Virus record (IMG/VR): IMGVR_UViG_3300035181_000357
Coordinates: 62,001-126,000 of that record
DNA: 64,000 bases
Reading direction: 5' to 3' (one strand)
Made by a program: the position numbers and the translations under genes. This document shows positions 3,424 to 48,458 of this stretch, one piece after another. The notes under the pieces are model-generated. The model ran no database searches. It had not been told where the DNA came from and saw only the letters and a program-made list of their open reading frames with translations. Within the stretch, counting starts at the first letter, position 1, and the number at the start of each line of letters is the position of its first letter.

Positions 3424-3580
3424 GGAAAACTCCTTTTATATTTTGATGGGTCCGAACAGCCGAGATGGCGAGTTCTACATAGACTCATCGATTCATAATT
3501 AGAACATGAAGTAATTTTTATATTATTTTTACGTAAACGCATTGTTACTAGTTCTACGAAAATGATAAAGCCTGTATAGT

Positions 3581-10450: not shown

Positions 10451-13400
10451 TTAAGCCTTTGTGGTAACTTTGAGGGTTACGTTGATGTACAGTAGAGAGA
10501 AGACAGGCTTGAAGGCTACTGTGACATCTAGGACAGTAGGATCAGACTCGTTACGAGTAACTTGTAGACCCTTATAGGCTTCAATAATTTCTTGTTGAAC
10601 GAAGTTCTTCATGACAGAGTTCATCACGATCGTAACATCATTAACAAGAGCTCCGAGGTTCTTTCTTCCGATGAATTGATTGAGTTCCTTGCGGATCTTC
10701 TGTCTTACTTCATCAGAGATTGAGGTATTGGTTGGTTCCTGCGTGATAGGATTGCTCATATCAGTGGTTAGGTAGTGGCGAACAGTGAAGGCACCATTAT
10801 CCTCTATCAATACAGAGACTCCATCAGTTGCGATCTGATCCATGGTTGGATCGTCATATCTCTGGAGGAGACGCTCGAATCCGACCATCTTCTTACGAGT
10901 AAGAGTGGTAGCAGAATCGATTGCTGGATTGCCCTTCATACCTGCCATTGCAGCAGCTAGGAACTCACCACCAACAGCGTACTCAGAAGACTTACCATCA
11001 ACTTCTAGGCTGATGATTGCACCTGCTGGATATACAGCGACGACACGCTCTGACTTGATACTTTGAGCTCTTGATCTTGCATCTACTGGAGAAGTTCCAG
11101 TGCTGAAGCCTACAAAGCCCATAGCCTCTCCCTTATTACGAGGAGCAGCTTGTGTATTGAGGTGCTTGGCTAAGAATTGTTGAACACTCTTCTCAGTGTT
11201 TAAAGGCACAATAACAGAAGCCTTTGTGGTTCCACCAGTGATTGGACGAGCTAGAGAAGCAATACCATCGATGAAAGTCTGGTTAGATGCAATTGCTGAA
11301 CCAACTTGCTTCTTGAGCTGCATGCATCCGAGAGTGGTTGTACCATTCAGGACAGCAAGGCGAGCAGCGAGGGATAGCTTGTTTTCTACAGTAGGATTAC
11401 CATAAGCAGCATATACATCAGACAGGTTCGTGAAGATCTTTAACTCATAATCCTTATCGGTCTTTGCAGTCTTGAAGGATACATAGTAGAACTCACCAAC
11501 AGTTGGTTCTGCACCAGCCTTATTATAGGTGTTGATGAAGAGGTAATCATTTGCAGCCATTCCAAAGGTGGTCGATACCTTGGTACGGATACCAGGGATT
11601 GCAACAACTGGAACAGTAGAAGTGACATAGTGGACGCTCTTGCTTACGACGAATACTAGAGTGTCACCAGGAGCATAACGATAAGAGATTGGAGCGGTTA
11701 GACCATAGTCAGCAATGTTTGAGGCATTTGGATCCACGATCGTGACAGAGAATCCAGTGACAGAGTCGTTGTAAGTCTGACCGAGGTACCCGATACCAGC
11801 AGATCCACCAGTTACTAGGTTGGAAGATACAGTGTACTTGCTGCTGAATGCAGTATTTACATCAGGAGTACCACCAGCGAAGTTCAACTTAGCAGAAGTA
11901 GTAGCATTAGTAGAACCAGTACCAGTTAGTGTAGCAGTGATTAGTCCACCAGCAGTGGTTACTAGAGCACCAGCACCTAATGCAGCGTTTGCAGTGAAGA
12001 GGGCTACGATCTGGGTAAGGGTTCTTACAGTACCAGCACCATCAGTGATCTCTACAGAGACATCGTTACCAACGATAGTTAATGCAGCTGCATCTAATGT
12101 ATTTCCAGTGTTCTTGAACTGGATGGATACTGGAGTTACAGCAGAATCAAACTTATTGAATGTTCTGAAAGTGATACCAGTCTGAGCAGTAGTGTTAGTT
12201 GCCTGAGTTCCAGGAGTCTGAAGATAGCTCTCTCCAGTTGTAGCGAAGGTTAAGGTTACGACCTCTTCCTCGGCACCAGCAACAATCTTGGCATCAGAGA
12301 AAGTATTAGGCCACAGAATACCACCAGAGGAGGTGAAGACTGGGTCAGCTACAGTGTGAGTAGATTGATTGACAGTTGGGATCTGAAGATCGTTCTTATC
12401 CCAGATAGAGTAAGAACCCTGTCCGGTTACGCCAGGAACTTGTACCTTGACCTTGAACTTGTTATCAGCAAGACGAGACTTGAAGTATGTTACATAGACA
12501 CTTCCAGTTGCAGGAGGATTGAAGAGAGTTACTCTCTTATTTGCTCCATCAACTGAAGAGATGGTTACAGGAACTAGAGCAGCAGTTGGAGTAGCTCTGG
12601 TGTAGGCTTTTACATAAGCAGGATTATCGGTTACTCTTGATAGACCAGATCCAGTAGTAGGAGCATCCTTAAGAGTAAATACGTTGTTGATTCCATTCAC
12701 TGAACCAGTTGCTAACTCAAGGTAGACCTTATCATCCACGAGAGTGGCGATGATGTGAGAAGCATCGAAGGCGGTGAATCCACTAGATTGTAGACCAGCA
12801 GAAGCTGATACGGAAGCTCCCCACTGAATTTTATCACCCTCTAGGACATAGTCGATAGTGTTGATGAAGTCATCTCTATCAGGGGAGAATCCACACTTTA
12901 AGATCTCAGTAATATTTTCAGCAGGTAGGAAGTCGAAAGTATCCTGATAGGTGTTGGTGAAATAGGTAGTTAGTAAGGTCGAACCAAAAGCTACATCCCC
13001 ATTTAGAGTTATTAAACCATTTAAACCATCTACTGACGTAACACCAACGGCAGAACCGTTAACAGTTACTTTGACGTGAGCAGGGAGGTTGGTTACAACA
13101 CCACCGTTTGAACCATCTACGATAGGTAGGTTCTTGACCTTGAAGACCTTGCTAGTGCTCTGGCCTTCTCCACCAACGAATGGTGCAGAAGTAGCAGCGA
13201 CAGCAGCAGAACCACCACTAAGAGTGGCAGTTACCTGGATCAAACCACCAGAGGCAGTGATGATTCCAGTGTTGATTAAGGTAGCGAGTTCAGCGATAGT
13301 TCTATGAACAGGAACGGCAACGGTTCCCTTGACTAATTCGATTGAGATAACATCTGTACCCTGCCCACTGATGGCTAGAGTGTCAGATTTAGGAGCACCG

Positions 13401-13981
13401 AGGGTCTCAGTGAAAGCTACGGTAACATTATTCCCTGCGAAGCCTGGCTTCTCTAACTTGAGAGACAGGTTACCAGCCTGGGCTACTAGGGTTGCAAACT
13501 TAGGAATCTGGACGCTGAGATCTTCATCAGTTACTAAGTCATCACTTCTTTTGAAGAAGTAACTAGTTCTTAGATCAGAACCAGGGAGGAGAATAACATC
13601 GATTAGGAATTTTCCTGTGGCGCCATCTAAGGTCGAGACACTAATAGGATTCCCATCAACGGTTACAGAGATATCAGTTGGTGTGTTTGTAGTAGTTCCA
13701 CGACCATCCCCATTAACAATTGGGAAGTAGGCAACCTGGAATTCTCGCTTAACACCATCGACTTGGTCACTTAGATTTTCTAAGACCTTTCTGTCGTCTG
13801 ATGAAGAACTAGAACCTCTGTGGAGTTCCGCATTATTAGAGGTTTTAAATTCTTCTCCTTCTCCGAGAAGGACAGTGATACGAGCATCTCCGAAGAGTGA
13901 AGTACCAGCATCTTCGGTAGTAAGAGTAGTGTAGACACCGGGTTGGGCGTATTGATCAAAAAGAGCCATGCTTTTCTCCAT
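10451..13981 (-). CDS. Tail sheath protein with large repeated insertion domains
   Basis: N-terminal YAQPGVYT; C-terminal sheath signature (FLAAAMAG, FTVRHYLTT, FIGRKN, VTVAFKPVFSLLYINVT). Confidence 0.9.
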   Translation of the reverse strand: MEKSMALFDQYAQPGVYTTLTTEDAGTSLFGDARITVLLGEGEEFKTSNNAELHRGSSSSSDDRKVLENLSDQVDGVKREFQVAYFPIVNGDGRGTTTNTPTDISVTVDGNPISVSTLDGATGKFLIDVILLPGSDLRTSYFFKRSDDLVTDEDLSVQIPKFATLVAQAGNLSLKLEKPGFAGNNVTVAFTETLGAPKSDTLAISGQGTDVISIELVKGTVAVPVHRTIAELATLINTGIITASGGLIQVTATLSGGSAAVAATSAPFVGGEGQSTSKVFKVKNLPIVDGSNGGVVTNLPAHVKVTVNGSAVGVTSVDGLNGLITLNGDVAFGSTLLTTYFTNTYQDTFDFLPAENITEILKCGFSPDRDDFINTIDYVLEGDKIQWGASVSASAGLQSSGFTAFDASHIIATLVDDKVYLELATGSVNGINNVFTLKDAPTTGSGLSRVTDNPAYVKAYTRATPTAALVPVTISSVDGANKRVTLFNPPATGSVYVTYFKSRLADNKFKVKVQVPGVTGQGSYSIWDKNDLQIPTVNQSTHTVADPVFTSSGGILWPNTFSDAKIVAGAEEEVVTLTFATTGESYLQTPGTQATNTTAQTGITFRTFNKFDSAVTPVSIQFKNTGNTLDAAALTIVGNDVSVEITDGAGTVRTLTQIVALFTANAALGAGALVTTAGGLITATLTGTGSTNATTSAKLNFAGGTPDVNTAFSSKYTVSSNLVTGGSAGIGYLGQTYNDSVTGFSVTIVDPNASNIADYGLTAPISYRYAPGDTLVFVVSKSVHYVTSTVPVVAIPGIRTKVSTTFGMAANDYLFINTYNKAGAEPTVGEFYYVSFKTAKTDKDYELKIFTNLSDVYAAYGNPTVENKLSLAARLAVLNGTTTLGCMQLKKQVGSAIASNQTFIDGIASLARPITGGTTKASVIVPLNTEKSVQQFLAKHLNTQAAPRNKGEAMGFVGFSTGTSPVDARSRAQSIKSERVVAVYPAGAIISLEVDGKSSEYAVGGEFLAAAMAGMKGNPAIDSATTLTRKKMVGFERLLQRYDDPTMDQIATDGVSVLIEDNGAFTVRHYLTTDMSNPITQEPTNTSISDEVRQKIRKELNQFIGRKNLGALVNDVTIVMNSVMKNFVQQEIIEAYKGLQVTRNESDPTVLDVTVAFKPVFSLLYINVTLKVTTKA

Positions 13982-40821: not shown

Positions 40822-43534
<2,713 letters not shown>

Positions 43535-45705: not shown

Positions 45706-46617
45706 CTACTGCAGTTCTTCAGAAATATCATACGTTTCTGGGACAGAATCTTGAACCCTTATCTCTTCCAACTCTACTCTCTGGAGTAATGAAATACCAG
45801 AAGTATCTGAATTTGCACTTGAATCAAAAATTTGATCGATGATCCTTTTCTCTTCTCTTATAAAAGATGTCTCCATCAAAACCGGATCATCCTCTAAGAA
45901 GGATAGAGCTCTTAGACCACATCGCAGACTGTGATACTTCTTGTCATCACCACAACAGGTTTCTAACTCTTCCATGAAACCTTCTGCATCCTCTTTTGTC
46001 TTAGCTAGGAAAGTCATCCCAACCTTTCTACCATCCTCTATAATCTTATACTTTAACCACGACGTATCCATCGTAGTTATCCTTTGGGATTCCAGGATCT
46101 CAAACTGTTCCCTGATTCTTTCTCTTATAATATCTGAAGTGGAATGCATATACATCTCAGATGGGATAGGAGGATTCTTTGCCTGAACTTTCTTCAATTG
46201 GAGAATCAAAGAATATGTGTCTACCAGAGTTGGATCTTGATCTTTTGGTAAATTCTTTATCTCGAAAGAGAGTCTTGATTCCAACTCTTCCCTTGTCAAG
46301 AACAATAGAAGCATATCTCTTCGAAGTCTTGCATTAGGAAAGTCATACAAGTCATTAAATCTAGAGACTAGCTTATCTCTAACATCTTCTAGAGTTTTCT
46401 TTAGAAGACTACTATTTTTCAGTAGTAATTTTCGTCTATAGATTAGGTCATTTACTTTTGGAAATACGACATCTCGATAGTGAAGAGCTACACATTGAAG
46501 TGTTGTCTCTTTTATCTCTTTGCCTGAATCTAACCTAAATCTCAAACCAAACCTCTTCCTACTTAATACGGGATTAAGTATGACCTGTAGTACAAATTTA
46601 ATCGATTCAAACCTCAC
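45706..46617 (-). CDS. Orphan protein directly downstream of the structured RNA; candidate partner of the TnpB-like locus
   Basis: 303 aa, basic N-half, acidic C-terminus; no confident family. Confidence 0.55.
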   Translation of the reverse strand: MRFESIKFVLQVILNPVLSRKRFGLRFRLDSGKEIKETTLQCVALHYRDVVFPKVNDLIYRRKLLLKNSSLLKKTLEDVRDKLVSRFNDLYDFPNARLRRDMLLLFLTREELESRLSFEIKNLPKDQDPTLVDTYSLILQLKKVQAKNPPIPSEMYMHSTSDIIRERIREQFEILESQRITTMDTSWLKYKIIEDGRKVGMTFLAKTKEDAEGFMEELETCCGDDKKYHSLRCGLRALSFLEDDPVLMETSFIREEKRIIDQIFDSSANSDTSGISLLQRVELEEIRVQDSVPETYDISEELQ

Positions 46618-46626
46618 AATTTTAAA

Positions 46627-46846
46627 CTCTGAAGACCAGAGATTGCCTAGTATGCACCCAAGAGATAAGTCTCGGGGTTATTGATCAAACCCAGCTGGCT
46701 CACATACGTGGCCACTGTAAAGCCGCAGCAGCTTGGGAAAGAATCAACGATACAGACTTGTTGATTCCAACCACCTCCTTAGATACCACTCTTGGATATC
46801 CTCAGTTTGTTTAACTGAAACTTTGAATAAAGGAGACTCAATAACC
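46627..46846 (-). ncRNA. Multi-stem structured RNA (about 220 nt)
   Basis: Nested helices: 46676-84/46838-46, 46775-80/46830-35, 46741-48/46760-67, 46690-96/46730-37 plus small hairpins; G-U pairs favour minus strand. Confidence 0.65.
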
Positions 46847-46857
46847 AAATGGATCGT

Positions 46858-46877
46858 TTATTATGATTATTGTTATT
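46858..46877 (-). repeat. 20-nt exact copy of 48246-48265 (candidate guide)
   Basis: TTATTATGATTATTGTTATT on + strand at both positions. Confidence 0.95.
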
Positions 46878-46965
46878 TTCTTTCGACGTTGCGTTTGGGA
46901 CAAAGTCCTCAGCAGAACCAAGGATGAGTAGAGGGAGGCACCTTAGGTGCTTCTAATTCTGCATA
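46878..46965 (-). ncRNA. Candidate omegaRNA-like scaffold overlapping the 3' end of the TnpB-like gene
   Basis: GCAGAATTAG/TTGGTTCTGC stem enclosing GCACC-TAA-GGTGC, then GGAC-TTT-GTCC, then the 20-nt repeat. Confidence 0.45.
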
Positions 46966-48075
46966 TCCTAGTTCCATACACGAAGAAGCTAGAACCTGAC
47001 TTCTAAGCCTGTTCTTTCCTCTTCGTTTTGAGATGATACCAGTATCCTGGATAATCTTAAACGCGATAGCACCTTCCGCCTGTCGCGATCTCCCAATCCT
47101 TTTGATGATCATATCGATATCGTCAAGATTGTTCTTAGTGTCTTTCTTATGTTTACTAAGGAAGACGAATCTACAATTCTTAGAAATCTCTTTAAAAAGA
47201 GAATTAAGATACTTGTAGTGGTTCTTTCGAACCCTATCTGCTTTGACACTGATCTCTAATTCCTTACCGGTATCGAGGCTCAGAACCTTTATACTTAGAT
47301 GATCGTTGTCAGCAGCAATACCAATATCTAAGGAACCAGAAGGTGTAGTATCAGTTGCTTCGACGGATTTCAAGACCATATAATAATATCTGTGATCTCG
47401 TCTTACAACCTTTATACTCTTAACATCTGCCTTTTTAATACTGGATGGTATGGTTACAGAAGTTTTTAATTTCTGTAACCTGGTTTCTAGTTCTTTTATC
47501 AGGTTCTTGGTCTTGGTCTCATATCTACTAAATGTGATATGGATAGGATCTTCATCCTCTTCATAATCCCAAGACATCTTACTCAATCTCGAGGTCTCTA
47601 ATTCAGTCTTCGATTTCAATTCCATGCTAATCTTACTAAGTTTATTCTGTAAGATTCGTCTCGTTTTCCCAGTGGCTACATCAGAACGTTCCTGGTTTCG
47701 CTTCATTTCATAGCGTCTCTTGTTTTCGATTCGCTTCAGATTCAGATATTCGGTTTCAAGTTTCGTGTTCAGAGTTTTTAGTCTTTTGTCTGTTTTCGGT
47801 CGCAGGTGTCGTTGGGTGAGTTTACGTTTACGTTGGTAGTCTTTCAGGCATATCTCGACGATCTCTCTATCCCGTACTAACATGGAGGCTACATCTATGC
47901 ATAGCGCATTGGGTTCAGAAGAAAAAGATTCGGGGGTTAGGTTCTGGATTCGGCCACCAGAAGCGTCTATACCCACTAGACAATTCCACACCATTCTGTA
48001 GATCAAGAACTGCTGACCATAGTCGCCAGTTCTAACAAATGATCTTCTTACAACAGATGACATGAACAATCTCAC
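46909..48075 (-). CDS. Probable nuclease-dead TnpB/Cas12f-derived protein
   Basis: 388 aa, very basic; RMVWN helix, KSIKVVRRDHRYYYMV, DIGIAA..LSLDTGK, HYKYLNSLFKEISKNCRFVFLS, RSQVLASSCMELG..EAP occur in TnpB order with RuvC D/E/D apparently replaced. Confidence 0.5.
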   Translation of the reverse strand: MRLFMSSVVRRSFVRTGDYGQQFLIYRMVWNCLVGIDASGGRIQNLTPESFSSEPNALCIDVASMLVRDREIVEICLKDYQRKRKLTQRHLRPKTDKRLKTLNTKLETEYLNLKRIENKRRYEMKRNQERSDVATGKTRRILQNKLSKISMELKSKTELETSRLSKMSWDYEEDEDPIHITFSRYETKTKNLIKELETRLQKLKTSVTIPSSIKKADVKSIKVVRRDHRYYYMVLKSVEATDTTPSGSLDIGIAADNDHLSIKVLSLDTGKELEISVKADRVRKNHYKYLNSLFKEISKNCRFVFLSKHKKDTKNNLDDIDMIIKRIGRSRQAEGAIAFKIIQDTGIISKRRGKNRLRSQVLASSCMELGYAELEAPKVPPSTHPWFC

Positions 48076-48137
48076 AAGTTAGGAACTGATACACTCAAGG
48101 TCAAGTAAATTCTTAATTCTACAAGAAGTTATCGATA

Positions 48138-48412
48138 TCCTGTATAGTAAGAACAACAAGGATGACCGTAACCTGTAACAACCTGTATTCTTAATAATTA
48201 TAATAGATAACTGATAATAAGTAACAATTATAACTTATAATGATGTTATTATGATTATTGTTATTAGGAATTAAGGACATGTTGTACACCTGTATCTAAT
48301 TGTTGTTGTAGCTGACAGGTTGTGTTCTCAATTTTGGACAATTTATACTTTCTGAATCATGTTTTTAAAGTCTCTCTATTACCAGGTACTTAAGAACACT
48401 TCATACACAGGT
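48138..48412. promoter_or_regulatory. Divergent control region and candidate replication origin
   Basis: Only strand switch in the window; about 80-nt AT-rich core 48187-48266; ACCTGT at 48171, 48181, 48288 and inverted ACAGGT at 48315, 48407. Confidence 0.55.
48246..48265. repeat. 20-nt exact copy of 46858-46877 (candidate target)
   Basis: Identical 20-mer, same orientation. Confidence 0.95.
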
Positions 48413-48458
48413 ATAAAATTAGGATTTAGAACTTGTCACCTTATTGAAGAGGTGACCT

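What the first reader, a model, noticed from the sequence alone, without database searches (positions are those of the whole stretch)
46858..48265. Exact 20-nt direct repeat linking the gene's downstream and upstream regions
TTATTATGATTATTGTTATT occurs at 46858-46877 and 48246-48265 with different flanks. The first copy is an isolated AT-rich island between structured elements, and 20 nt is guide length. On the minus strand the upstream copy is preceded by ...TAATTCCT (possible 5' TAM) and followed by CATCA. Caveat: the 20-mer is low complexity. Alternatives are a shared operator for the two genes or the boundary of an old insertion.
Basis: seen in the sequence. Interest (0 to 1): 0.75.

Follow-up and report, generated by a model that had tools for sequence, protein, structure and literature searches.

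The report
Phage RNA-guided protein targeting its own genome
The 20-base repeat most likely marks the guide RNA and the DNA target of a previously unrecognised, probably cutting-dead relative of the TnpB/Cas12 RNA-guided nucleases, which a lineage of very large phages keeps aimed at the central control region of its own genome.

Summary
The exact 20-mer lies at 46858-46877 and 48246-48265 and nowhere else in the 210-kb virus record.

Between the copies lies a 384-aa gene (46909-48063, minus strand) with no Pfam, PHROG or PDB sequence match. Its predicted fold is closest to ISDra2 TnpB (Z 11.8, full length).

Seven related jumbo-phage contigs, with proteins only 26-50% identical to this one, carry the gene at the same syntenic junction. 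Each has an exact 20-25-nt repeat in the same geometry: one copy 31-60 nt after the stop codon, one in the upstream divergent intergenic region. The repeat differs between five lineages, and both copies change together.

The downstream copy follows a structured RNA that overlaps the end of the gene and shows compensatory changes, like a TnpB omega-RNA. Only the upstream copy carries a 5' TTCYY-like motif (6 of 7 loci).

RuvC-II and RuvC-III carboxylates and the zinc finger appear lost. My best reading is a TldR-like, nuclease-dead, RNA-guided DNA binder that regulates the phage's own divergent control region.

Repression, activation and an origin role cannot be told apart here. A ~300-nt covarying RNA domain right after the guide is unexplained. 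No RNA data exist.

The parts
48266..48270 (-). Candidate TAM, 5'-TTCCT-3' on the minus (gene-sense, non-target) strand, immediately 5' of the target. The wider flank is TAATTCCT (48266-48273).
   Evidence: The 5' flanks of the upstream copy in the 7 loci are TTCCT, TTCCT, TCCCT, TAATT (L006, the exception), TTCTC, TTCTC and TTCCT. The 5' flank of the downstream (guide) copy is purine-rich and lacks the motif.
48246..48265 (-). Predicted DNA target (protospacer), AATAACAATAATCATAATAA on the minus strand, in the middle of the AT-rich divergent intergenic region 48064-48458.
   Evidence: It is an exact match to the guide and the only such site in the 210-kb record. It is the longest fully conserved block in an intergenic alignment with 60% mean identity. 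It co-varies with the guide in relatives.
48197..48204 (.). Palindromic ATTATAAT box, which reads as a TATAAT -10-like hexamer on both strands, 43 nt from the target. It sits inside a very AT-rich stretch (about 80% A+T by my count) with repeated TTAT[CT] units.
   Evidence: A TTATTATAAT-type box lies 54-71 nt from the target start in all 7 loci. The promoter scan flags it on both strands. Its function is inferred only.
46909..48063 (-). Gene for a 384-aa TnpB-fold protein, predicted nuclease-dead. The start is taken as the ATG at 48063 by alignment with homologues; the open frame runs up to a GTG at 48075.
   Evidence: No Pfam, PHROG or PDB sequence hit. AlphaFold2 model pLDDT 76.7. Best structural match among 48,161 PDB representatives is ISDra2 TnpB 8h1j_A, Z 11.8 with 258 residues aligned over residues 2-372; the other matches of about 250 residues or more are Fanzor2, Cas12f, ISFba1 TnpB, Cas12i and Cas12m (CasPi aligns 225). 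AFDB and ESM Atlas neighbours are IS605 OrfB / Cas12f1-like TNB proteins. The gene is syntenic in 7 related contigs.
46878..47094 (-). Omega-RNA-like scaffold that overlaps the last ~185 nt of the coding sequence and runs 31 nt past the stop codon. It ends with a hairpin at the stop codon (~46893-46910), a conserved CCAAACGCAA motif and a ~10-nt variable linker. The 5' boundary is approximate.
   Evidence: The DNA is near-invariant, including third codon positions. Synonymous-codon identity is 0.73 at residues 321-352 against 0.34-0.61 elsewhere. The RNAalifold structure has 67 pairs, 14 with compensatory changes against 7.4+-1.8 in shuffles (0/500), and 89.5% of cells paired against ~42% when partners are slid. 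It is single-copy in the genome and weakly detectable at the syntenic place in L008 and L009.
46858..46877 (-). Predicted 20-nt guide, AAUAACAAUAAUCAUAAUAA as RNA, at the 3' end of the scaffold and 31 nt after the stop codon.
   Evidence: It is an exact copy of the target. The same position relative to the stop codon (31-60 nt) and to the scaffold holds in all 7 loci.
46558..46857 (-). Second, ~300-nt structured RNA domain that starts ~12 nt after the guide. It is closed by the helix GGTTATTGA/TCAATAACC and ends in a terminator-like hairpin (46627-46641) followed by TTTAAAA (46620-46626). Its role is unknown and it may or may not belong to the guide RNA.
   Evidence: RNAalifold on 5 loci gives 72 pairs, 33 with compensatory changes against 13.2+-2.6 in shuffles (0/500), and 92.4% of cells paired against ~40% when slid. 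Invariant G-U pairs place it on the gene-sense strand. No Rfam family matches. It is short or absent in L009.
45706..46545 (-). Conserved downstream neighbour gene (~280 aa; probable TTG start at 46545 behind a GAAGAGG ribosome-binding site), always adjacent and possibly co-transcribed. Function unknown.
   Evidence: Present in all 7 loci at 45-63% identity and found only in this phage lineage. No Pfam or PHROG hit. AlphaFold2 pLDDT is 52, which is uninformative. The start was re-derived from conserved N-terminal translation in L003, L007 and L009.

Best explanation
The two 20-mers are the guide and the DNA target of a domesticated TnpB-family RNA-guided protein kept by a lineage of jumbo phages.

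How I think it works:
- The 384-aa gene (46909-48063, minus strand) encodes a TnpB-fold protein.
- Its transcript carries an omega-RNA-like scaffold that overlaps the 3' end of the coding sequence and ends, 31 nt past the stop codon, in the 20-nt guide (46877->46858).
- The ribonucleoprotein recognises the single matching site in the phage's own genome (48265->48246), which is flanked 5' by a TTCCT-type TAM. That site lies in the AT-rich divergent intergenic region between the leftward replication/nucleotide-metabolism genes and the rightward operon.
- The protein appears to have lost the RuvC-II Glu, the RuvC-III Asp and the zinc-finger/TNB domain. I therefore expect it to bind without cutting and, most likely, to regulate transcription there as the known TldR repressors do. 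It could control its own operon or the divergent one.

Shown here: the repeat, its uniqueness in the genome, its co-variation in relatives, the fold, and the RNA covariation.
Inferred: that the RNA is made and bound, that the motif is a TAM, that the protein is nuclease-dead, and the regulatory outcome.
For: 1. In 7 of 7 related contigs (proteins 26-50% identical, same synteny) an exact 20-25-nt direct repeat links a site 31-60 nt after the stop codon to the upstream divergent intergenic region. The next-best repeats are 11-14 nt.
2. The repeat sequence differs between five lineages, and both copies carry the same changes: 1 substitution in L006, 3 in L007, and several plus an indel in L008 and L009.
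3. The protein's best match among 48,161 PDB representatives is the ISDra2 TnpB-omegaRNA-DNA complex (Z 11.8, 258 aa over the full length). The other matches of about 250 residues or more are Fanzor2, Cas12f, ISFba1 TnpB, Cas12i and Cas12m (CasPi aligns 225). AFDB, ESM Atlas shape and ESM feature neighbours are IS605 OrfB / Cas12f1-like TNB proteins.
4. The scaffold has omega-RNA geometry. It overlaps the 3' end of the gene, has 14 compensatory pairs (0/500 shuffles reach this) and raised synonymous-site conservation, with the guide at its 3' end.
5. A TTCYY-like 5' flank occurs only at the target copy, in 6 of 7 loci.
6. The genome holds a single scaffold and a single target.
7. An intact TAM plus target in the phage's own genome would be self-destructive for an active nuclease. 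This fits the missing acidic residues at the end of strand beta4 (S303), the invariant Ser355 at the start of the last helix, and the absent zinc finger. One homologue, P0006, keeps a CxxC...CxxxH remnant exactly between beta5 and that helix.
8. There is precedent. TldRs are TnpB derivatives with degraded RuvC sites and C-terminal truncations that repress promoters (10.1101/2023.11.30.569447; 10.64898/2026.09.22.753285). dCas12f guide RNAs also auto-regulate their own operon (PMC13472631).
Against: - No RNA-seq run was listed, so the RNA, its ends and the guide length are not observed.
- There is no sequence-level link to TnpB. Foldseek E-values are weak and TM-scores are below 0.5, so homology rests on full-length structural alignment of a pLDDT-77 model built from only 7 sequences.
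- Catalytic-residue mapping comes from secondary-structure topology and motif position, not from a residue-level superposition. An invariant Glu330 and a conserved acidic residue at position 365 are unexplained.
- The TAM motif fails in L006.
- The target does not overlap an identified promoter. Promoters here are only consensus guesses.
- A large covarying RNA domain directly 3' of the guide has no counterpart in known TnpB or TldR guide RNAs, where the guide is the 3' end.
- The complex-prediction job was not folded and gives no evidence either way.
Confidence: 0.72

Rival explanations
1. Antisense RNA-RNA regulation without DNA targeting. The 20-mer in the minus-strand RNA pairs with a plus-strand transcript of the divergent operon whose 5' leader crosses 48246-48265. 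In this reading it acts as a trans-acting small RNA on that mRNA, affecting its stability or translation, and the protein is a chaperone or is irrelevant.
For: Co-variation of the two copies is explained equally well. The target lies at a fairly constant 170-237 nt from the divergent operon's start codon. The palindromic TATAAT box at 48197-48204 could drive plus-strand transcription through the site.
Against: It does not explain why a TnpB-fold protein is always encoded with the RNA. It does not explain why the 20-mer sits exactly at the 3' end of a scaffold overlapping that gene, or why a conserved motif flanks the DNA site on the TAM side. A better-conserved promoter-like element for the divergent operon lies downstream of the site (48390-48419), which would leave the site untranscribed on the plus strand.
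Confidence: 0.08
2. The repeats are the boundaries of a mobile or once-mobile insertion: an att-like core or a duplication made on insertion of the gene cassette. Excision and reintegration or gene conversion keeps them identical, and there is no guide function.
For: Direct repeats bracket a TnpB-like gene, and TnpB genes come from IS200/IS605 and IS607 elements (established knowledge). The arrangement may indeed descend from a transposon flank.
Against: The gene sits at the same syntenic site in every known relative, with no empty site. No recombinase or TnpA is nearby. IS200/IS605 elements make no target duplication (established knowledge). Contigs from four metagenomes show no excision joint or deletion form. 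After such deep divergence (26-50% protein identity, 60% intergenic identity), passive boundary repeats should have decayed independently, yet all stay exact while differing between lineages. Similarity stops sharply at the repeat ends, so there is little substrate for conversion.
Confidence: 0.07
3. Both copies are operators or binding sites for one sequence-specific DNA-binding protein of the phage or host, for example one that loops or co-regulates the two ends of the gene.
For: Two identical AT-rich sites bracket a gene in a regulatory region.
Against: Protein operators tolerate degeneracy. Here 20-25 nt are exact in 7 of 7 genomes while the sequence drifts between lineages, including an indel. 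The motif occurs only twice per genome. The downstream copy's fixed place behind a covarying RNA scaffold and the one-sided flanking motif are not expected for operators.
Confidence: 0.05
4. The protein is still an active RNA-guided nuclease that cuts the phage's own genome at the site on purpose, for example to start recombination-dependent replication or processing, or cuts co-infecting relatives (homing).
For: RuvC-I Asp246 is kept in 6 of 7 proteins. An invariant Glu330 and a conserved acidic residue at 365 exist. The site lies at the genome's cumulative GC-skew minimum.
Against: By topology, the RuvC-II position is Ser303 and the RuvC-III position is the invariant Ser355, and the zinc-finger/TNB domain is missing. 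An intact TAM plus target in the donor genome is incompatible with a homing logic. This is inference, with no assay.
Confidence: 0.06

Closest known systems
TldR (TnpB-like nuclease-dead repressors; fliC-, csrA- and oppF-associated clades; Wiegand et al., 10.1101/2023.11.30.569447; Xiao et al., 10.64898/2026.09.22.753285)
   Same: It is a TnpB-fold protein with a degraded RuvC site and a C-terminal truncation that removes the zinc finger. It has a single guide RNA encoded at and after the 3' end of the gene, with the guide at the scaffold's 3' side. It has one conserved genomic target with a 5' TAM in an intergenic regulatory region. It is non-mobile and vertically inherited. One TldR clade is also phage-borne.
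   Different: There is no detectable sequence similarity to TnpB or TldR families (Pfam negative). It is carried by large, apparently lytic-type jumbo phages from sediment and mat metagenomes rather than by prophages or bacteria. The target is in the phage's own genome, next to the gene itself, not in a host gene. The match is 20-25 nt, against 9-16 nt guides reported for TldRs. A variable coiled-coil of up to about 95 aa here (absent from three homologues, much longer in P0005) is inserted in the REC region. A ~300-nt structured RNA follows the guide. Overlap of the target with a promoter is not shown.
dCas12f-sigmaE RNA-guided transcription (PMC13472631)
   Same: It is a nuclease-dead miniature type V / TnpB-like protein with an omega-RNA-like guide RNA encoded downstream of the gene. 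That system's guide RNAs also target upstream of their own operon. The TAM-to-target direction points towards the gene, as an activator would require.
   Different: No sigma-factor gene is recognisable next to it; the conserved neighbour has no family hit and a poor model. The TAM is longer than the single G of that system. The conserved -10-like box lies 54-71 nt from the target start, which would put a start site further away than the fixed 46 bp from the TAM in that system.
Canonical TnpB / omega-RNA of IS200/IS605 (for example ISDra2, PDB 8h1j)
   Same: It is the best structural match. The RNA scaffold overlaps the 3' end of the gene, the guide is 3' of the scaffold, and the TAM is 5' of the target on the non-target strand.
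   Different: It is not in a transposon: there is no TnpA, no recognisable ends, a single copy and fixed synteny. The catalytic triad and zinc finger appear lost. The guide's target coexists intact in the same genome.
Cas9 autoregulation by long-form tracrRNA (cited in 10.1101/2023.11.30.569447)
   Same: An RNA-guided effector binds, without cutting, a site in the promoter region of its own operon.
   Different: It is a different protein family with a different mechanism of nuclease avoidance (a truncated guide rather than a dead active site).

Membership tests
TnpB / Cas12 superfamily (fold level) | WED-REC-RuvC bilobed architecture with an RNase-H-like RuvC domain at the C-terminus | tested here: met
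   AlphaFold2 model pLDDT 76.7 with N-terminal beta strand, helical REC, beta hairpins, then beta1-3/alpha/beta4/alpha/beta5/alpha. The top match among 48,161 PDB representatives is ISDra2 TnpB, Z 11.8 with 258 aa over residues 2-372. AFDB and ESM Atlas full-length neighbours are IS605 OrfB / Cas12f1-like TNB proteins.
TnpB (sequence families PF01385 OrfB_IS605, PF07282 Cas12f1-like_TNB) | Significant match to the family profiles | tested here: not met
   No Pfam hit for any of the 7 homologues even at E<=10, apart from a Zn-ribbon hit in one member. No PF07282 match in the whole virus record. A profile search of 1.84 billion representatives returned only the phage lineage itself plus coiled-coil noise.
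TnpB nuclease (active) | Intact RuvC D-E-D triad and zinc-finger/TNB domain | tested here: not met
   Asp246 on beta1 is kept in 6 of 7 proteins. The end of beta4 is Ser303 (acidic only in P0006). The start of the last helix is an invariant Ser355. There is no CxxC pair except a remnant in P0006. The mapping is by topology and motif position, so it is an inference.
TnpB / TldR guide RNA | Structured scaffold overlapping or following the 3' end of the gene, with the guide directly at its 3' side | tested here: met
   The scaffold has 67 pairs, 14 of them compensatory (0/500 shuffles reach this), and overlaps the last ~185 nt of the coding sequence. The guide lies 31-60 nt after the stop in all 7 loci. 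RNA expression and RNA ends were not observed.
TnpB / TldR targeting | Conserved TAM 5' of the target on the non-target strand, absent next to the guide-encoding DNA | tested here: inconclusive
   TTCYY-type flank in 6 of 7 loci, with L006 as the exception (TAATT). The guide-side flank is purine-rich. Seven loci are too few for a logo, and there is no binding assay.
IS200/IS605 or IS607 transposon | TnpA gene, transposon ends, multiple copies or variable location, empty sites in relatives | tested here: not met
   No TnpA or recombinase nearby. One copy of the scaffold and gene per genome. Identical synteny in all relatives. No empty site found. No excision joints in four metagenomes.
TldR (functional definition) | Target overlaps a promoter or 5' region so that binding blocks RNA polymerase | tested here: inconclusive
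   The target lies mid-way in the divergent intergenic region, 43 nt from a conserved palindromic TATAAT box here, with the box 54-71 nt from the target start across the 7 loci. Promoters and start sites are unknown, and there are no expression data.
dCas12f-sigmaE RNA-guided transcription | Genetic linkage to an ECF sigma factor that is recruited to the R-loop | tested here: inconclusive
   The always-adjacent neighbour gene has no sigma-70 family hit. ESM features are weak (0.83, DUF5986). The AlphaFold2 model is unusable (pLDDT 52).

The most novel reading that the evidence does not exclude
The ribonucleoprotein may not be a simple repressor. It may instead form an R-loop at the phage's main strand-switch point. 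That point is the global GC-skew minimum, is very AT-rich with short TTAT[CT] repeats, and sits at the head of the helicase / topoisomerase / ribonucleotide-reductase module. There it could trigger an event such as RNA-guided transcription initiation of the replication operon or licensing or priming of the replication origin. In this reading the ~300-nt covarying RNA fused 3' to the guide acts as a new processing, sensing or recruiting module. That would be an RNA-guided developmental or replication switch native to a lytic jumbo phage.
Probability: 0.2. Interest if true: 0.92.

Novelty: new variant of a known kind. Interest (0 to 1): 0.76.

Why it matters
Nuclease-dead TnpB and Cas12f derivatives that act as natural RNA-guided transcription factors were described only recently and in a few clades, all found by sequence similarity to TnpB.

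This family is invisible to sequence profiles. It sits in jumbo phages and aims its single guide at the phage's own central control region. If confirmed, it would matter in four ways:
- It would show that TnpB exaptation reaches further, into lytic-type large phages and into self-regulation, than profile-based surveys can see.
- It would give a compact effector with a 20-25-nt match: 384 aa here, and 257-323 aa in the homologues that lack the coiled-coil.
- It would provide a natural case for asking why a phage uses an RNA guide rather than a protein repressor at its early/late or origin junction.
- It would add a large new structured RNA attached to a guide.

The guide/target co-variation across lineages also offers ready-made compensatory-mutation experiments.

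Tried and rejected
Searches that found nothing:
- Sequence searches of the protein against Pfam, PHROGs and PDB, including a C-terminal-domain profile.
- tblastn and blastn against 50,697 phage records.
- Extra loci by DNA pattern and by degenerate peptide patterns in viral, metagenome and genome collections. The lineage is known only from the contigs reached through the protein databases.
- Rfam at gathering threshold and at E<=5: no family for either RNA domain. A weak Twister-P5 hit on the opposite strand (17.9 bits against a 37.6 threshold) was dismissed.
- tRNA scan: none found.
- RNA runs: none was listed.

Checks that were uninformative or could not be run:
- Foldseek against PDB alone was weak (best E 2e-3, RuvX/YqgF), so I relied on VIA-align and the AFDB and Atlas searches.
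- DNA contigs of four metagenomes show no joints and no variants in the guide or target.
- The protein + RNA complex job was accepted but not folded, so it is no evidence either way.
Residue-level mapping of the catalytic triad therefore remains topological.
- The neighbour gene's structure came out at pLDDT 52, so I made no fold search.
- Whole-contig counts of the guide in L003 and L005 were not possible because those records are not held.

Readings considered and rejected:
- IS110/bridge-RNA recombinase: only the RuvC-like domain matches, and there is no Tnp domain or bipartite loops.
- IscB/IsrB-type 5'-guide RNA serving the downstream gene: that protein is mostly helical, there is no HEARO hit, and the conserved flank is on the 5' side of the target.
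Full report
**Observation.** The 20-mer TTATTATGATTATTGTTATT is at window 46858-46877 and 48246-48265. Allowing 3 mismatches, it has only these two copies in the window; 0.02 are expected, and 0 of 100 shuffles gave two. It also has only these two copies in the whole 210,611-bp virus record that holds the window. The next-nearest site has 4 mismatches, and any seed of 11 nt or more from the TAM-proximal end occurs only at the two copies. The flanks differ, and on the minus strand the upstream copy is preceded by TAATTCCT.

**Setting.** The window is part of a jumbo-phage record that CheckV rates 69% complete.
- To the left, all on the minus strand, lie a class II ribonucleotide reductase, a GyrB-like topoisomerase, and DnaB-like and other helicases.
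- To the right, from 48459 on the plus strand, lies an operon of large unknown proteins. One homologue of these carries a faint tail tape-measure signal.
- The repeat brackets the first minus-strand gene at this divergence point, ORF 46909-48075.
- The upstream copy lies in the middle of the ~400-bp AT-rich divergent intergenic region.
- The cumulative GC skew of the whole record has its global minimum here.

**The gene.**
- The protein (384 aa from the ATG at 48063) has no Pfam, PHROG or PDB sequence match, even as a profile.
- The original gene call covered only 222 aa (P0001).
- ESM features pointed to IS605 OrfB / TnpB clusters.
- Only six homologue clusters exist in 5.8 billion and 1.84 billion-protein libraries: P0002-P0007, 26-50% identical in the multiple alignment.
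- An AlphaFold2 model from these seven sequences has pLDDT 76.7.
- In a Foldseek-independent scan of 48,161 PDB representatives, the best match is the ISDra2 TnpB-omegaRNA-DNA complex: 8h1j_A, Z 11.8, 258 residues aligned over model residues 2-372. The other matches of about 250 residues or more are Fanzor2, Cas12f, ISFba1 TnpB, Cas12i and Cas12m (CasPi aligns 225). The C-terminal domain alone matches RuvC, RuvX and poxvirus resolvases.
- AFDB clusters and ESM Atlas shape neighbours are again IS605 OrfB / Cas12f1-like TNB proteins over the full length, at TM 0.3-0.48. Foldseek against PDB alone was weak.
- I conclude the protein has the TnpB fold but lies outside any sequence-defined family.

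**Active site (inferred).** The C-terminal domain has RNase-H topology.
- Strand beta1 carries DIGIA, with Asp246 kept in 6 of 7 proteins.
- The end of strand beta4 (RFVFLS), where RuvC-II Glu sits in RuvC/TnpB, is Ser303. It is acidic only in P0006.
- The zinc-finger/TNB domain that TnpB inserts between beta5 and the last helix is missing. Only P0006 keeps a CxxC...CxxxH remnant exactly there.
- The last helix starts with an invariant Ser355 where TnpB has the Asp of DxNAA.
- This pattern of degraded RuvC and C-terminal truncation is how TldRs are described.
- An invariant Glu330 is unexplained. The mapping is topological, not a residue-level superposition.

**Comparative test.** All homologues sit at the same junction, with the same neighbours on both sides. 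In every one, the longest repeat involving the ~600 nt around the gene's 3' end is an exact 20-25-nt direct repeat. One copy lies 31-60 nt after the stop codon and the other lies in the upstream divergent intergenic region. The runner-up repeats are 11-14 nt. On the gene-sense strand the repeat reads:

| Locus | Repeat sequence |
|---|---|
| Window, L003, L005 | AATAACAATAATCATAATAA |
| L006 | AATAATAATAATCATAATAAC |
| L007 | AATAATAATAACAATAATAA |
| L008 | AATAATAACAATAATCACAAATAA |
| L009/L010 | CTAATAATAATGATAATCATAACAA |

So the two copies have changed together at least four times. The surrounding intergenic DNA is only ~60% identical even among the four closest genomes, and there the target is the longest invariant block.

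**RNA scaffold 5' of the guide.**
- The last ~185 nt of the coding sequence are almost invariant at the DNA level.
- Synonymous-codon identity peaks at 0.73 for residues 321-352, against 0.34-0.61 elsewhere.
- RNAalifold predicts a multi-helix structure from ~47094 to the stop codon. It ends in a hairpin at the stop, a conserved CCAAACGCAA motif and a ~10-nt variable linker before the guide.
- Of its 67 pairs, 14 show compensatory changes, against 7.4+-1.8 in shuffles (0/500). 89.5% of cells are paired, against ~42% when partners are slid. One caveat is that the structure was derived from these same sequences.
- The scaffold is single-copy in the genome and is weakly found at the syntenic spot in the distant L008 and L009.
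- This is the geometry of a TnpB omega-RNA: the scaffold overlaps the 3' end of the gene and the guide is at its 3' side.

**TAM.** The 5' flank of the target copy is TTCCT, TTCCT, TCCCT, TTCTC, TTCTC or TTCCT in six loci and TAATT in L006. The 5' flank of the guide copy is purine-rich and never carries the motif. This fits a 5' TAM that also spares the guide-encoding DNA, but seven loci are too few to be sure.

**What binding would do.**
- The target is 170-237 nt from the divergent operon's start codon and 91-345 nt from the gene's own start codon.
- A TTATTATAAT-type box lies 54-71 nt from the target start in all seven loci. In the window it is palindromic (48197-48204), so it is a -10-like hexamer on both strands.
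- Depending on which strand uses the box, the target is either just upstream of the -35 region of the gene's own promoter or ~35-55 nt into a plus-strand leader.
- The TAM-to-target direction always points towards the gene. In the dCas12f-sigmaE system this is the direction of RNA-guided transcription, which starts 46 bp from the TAM, and those guide RNAs also act on their own operon.
- The always-adjacent downstream gene (true start probably the TTG at 46545) is conserved at 45-63% and restricted to this lineage. It has no family hit and an unusable model, so a sigma-like partner can be neither shown nor excluded.
- The region after the target is about 80% A+T by my count, with repeated TTAT[CT] units, and lies at the GC-skew minimum, so an origin-related role also remains open.
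- I rank steric repression in the TldR manner first because it needs no extra partner.

**Unexplained second RNA domain.** Starting ~12 nt after the guide, window 46857->46558 folds into a ~300-nt structure. It is closed by GGTTATTGA/TCAATAACC and ends in a terminator-like hairpin (46627-46641) followed by a short T-run.
- It has 72 pairs, 33 of them compensatory, against 13.2+-2.6 in shuffles (0/500), and 92.4% of cells are paired.
- Many invariant G-U pairs place it on the gene-sense strand.
- It has no Rfam match and is short or absent in L009.
- Known TnpB, TldR and Cas12f guide RNAs end with the guide. This domain may define or protect the guide's 3' end, sense something, or be a separate RNA.

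**Rivals.**
- An antisense small-RNA/mRNA interaction explains the co-variation. It does not explain the TnpB-fold protein, the scaffold or the one-sided flank.
- An old insertion boundary or att core may be the origin of the arrangement. It does not explain exact identity kept across deep divergence. There is also no empty site, no recombinase and no excision joint in four metagenomes.
- A shared protein operator would not need 20-25 exact positions that drift in step.
- An active self-cutting nuclease conflicts with the inferred loss of two catalytic residues and the zinc finger.
- Chance is excluded by 7 of 7 replication.

**Limits.** No RNA run was listed. No cultured relative exists. The complex prediction was not folded. 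A profile-profile comparison with TnpB could not be set up.

**Verdict.** The locus is best described as a new, sequence-orphan, TldR-like branch of the TnpB superfamily, domesticated by a jumbo-phage lineage and aimed at the phage's own divergent control region. The regulatory outcome and the 3' RNA domain remain open.

Noticed in passing
window 46558-46857 (minus strand); L003:11191-11517, L005:11031-11364, L006:11164-11552, L007:3539-3845: A ~300-nt noncoding domain directly after the guide has very strong covariation: 33 of 72 pairs are compensatory. It ends in a terminator-like hairpin and has no Rfam family. It is short or absent in L009.
   Followed up: partly
window ~46000-48300 (G000:C1 ~108000-110300): The global minimum of cumulative GC skew of the 210-kb record coincides with this locus and with the switch of gene orientation. 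The DNA just after the target is about 80% A+T with repeated TTAT[CT] units, so it could be a replication origin.
   Followed up: partly
window 46909-48075: The public gene call for this ORF covers only the C-terminal 222 aa (P0001). Homologues show that the full 384-aa frame from the ATG at 48063 is the gene.
   Followed up: yes
window 45706-46617: The downstream neighbour's longest ORF starts at a GTG at 46617. Conserved translation in L003, L007 and L009, together with a GAAGAGG ribosome-binding site, points to a TTG start at 46545. Several public calls for homologues start about 35 codons too late.
   Followed up: partly
P0006 (L008:10001-10894), residues ~225-255: This is the only homologue that keeps a CxxC...CxxxH zinc-ribbon remnant, between beta5 and the last helix. 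It also has Asn instead of the RuvC-I Asp and an Asp at the RuvC-II position. It looks like an intermediate stage of decay.
   Followed up: partly
window residues ~100-198 of the protein (about 47470-47765): A long coiled-coil hairpin is inserted in the REC region. It varies in length and is absent from P0003, P0006 and P0007, so it is dispensable for the core fold.
   Followed up: no
L005:15438-19190; L008:12302-16786; L005:14329-15366; L006:17109-18824; L009:13101-13874: Related phages carry inteins in the GyrB-like and ribonucleotide-reductase-region genes. They also carry free-standing DUF7487 and GIY-YIG/NUMOD3 genes, likely homing endonucleases, in the same module. The window's GyrB-like gene (41105-43534) has no intein.
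   Followed up: no
window 48136-48147, 3568-3579 (minus strand) and G000 ~195300: The motif (T)TACTATACAGG occurs three times in the record. One copy is upstream of the TnpB-like gene and one directly follows a strong terminator-like hairpin. It may be a phage-specific promoter or start-site motif. TTAAGAAC also appears near both divergent gene starts.
   Followed up: partly
window 10451-13981: A 1176-aa protein whose C-terminal ~350 aa match a tail-sheath family. It lies in the same minus-strand block as the replication genes, so the leftward block is not purely a replication module.
   Followed up: no
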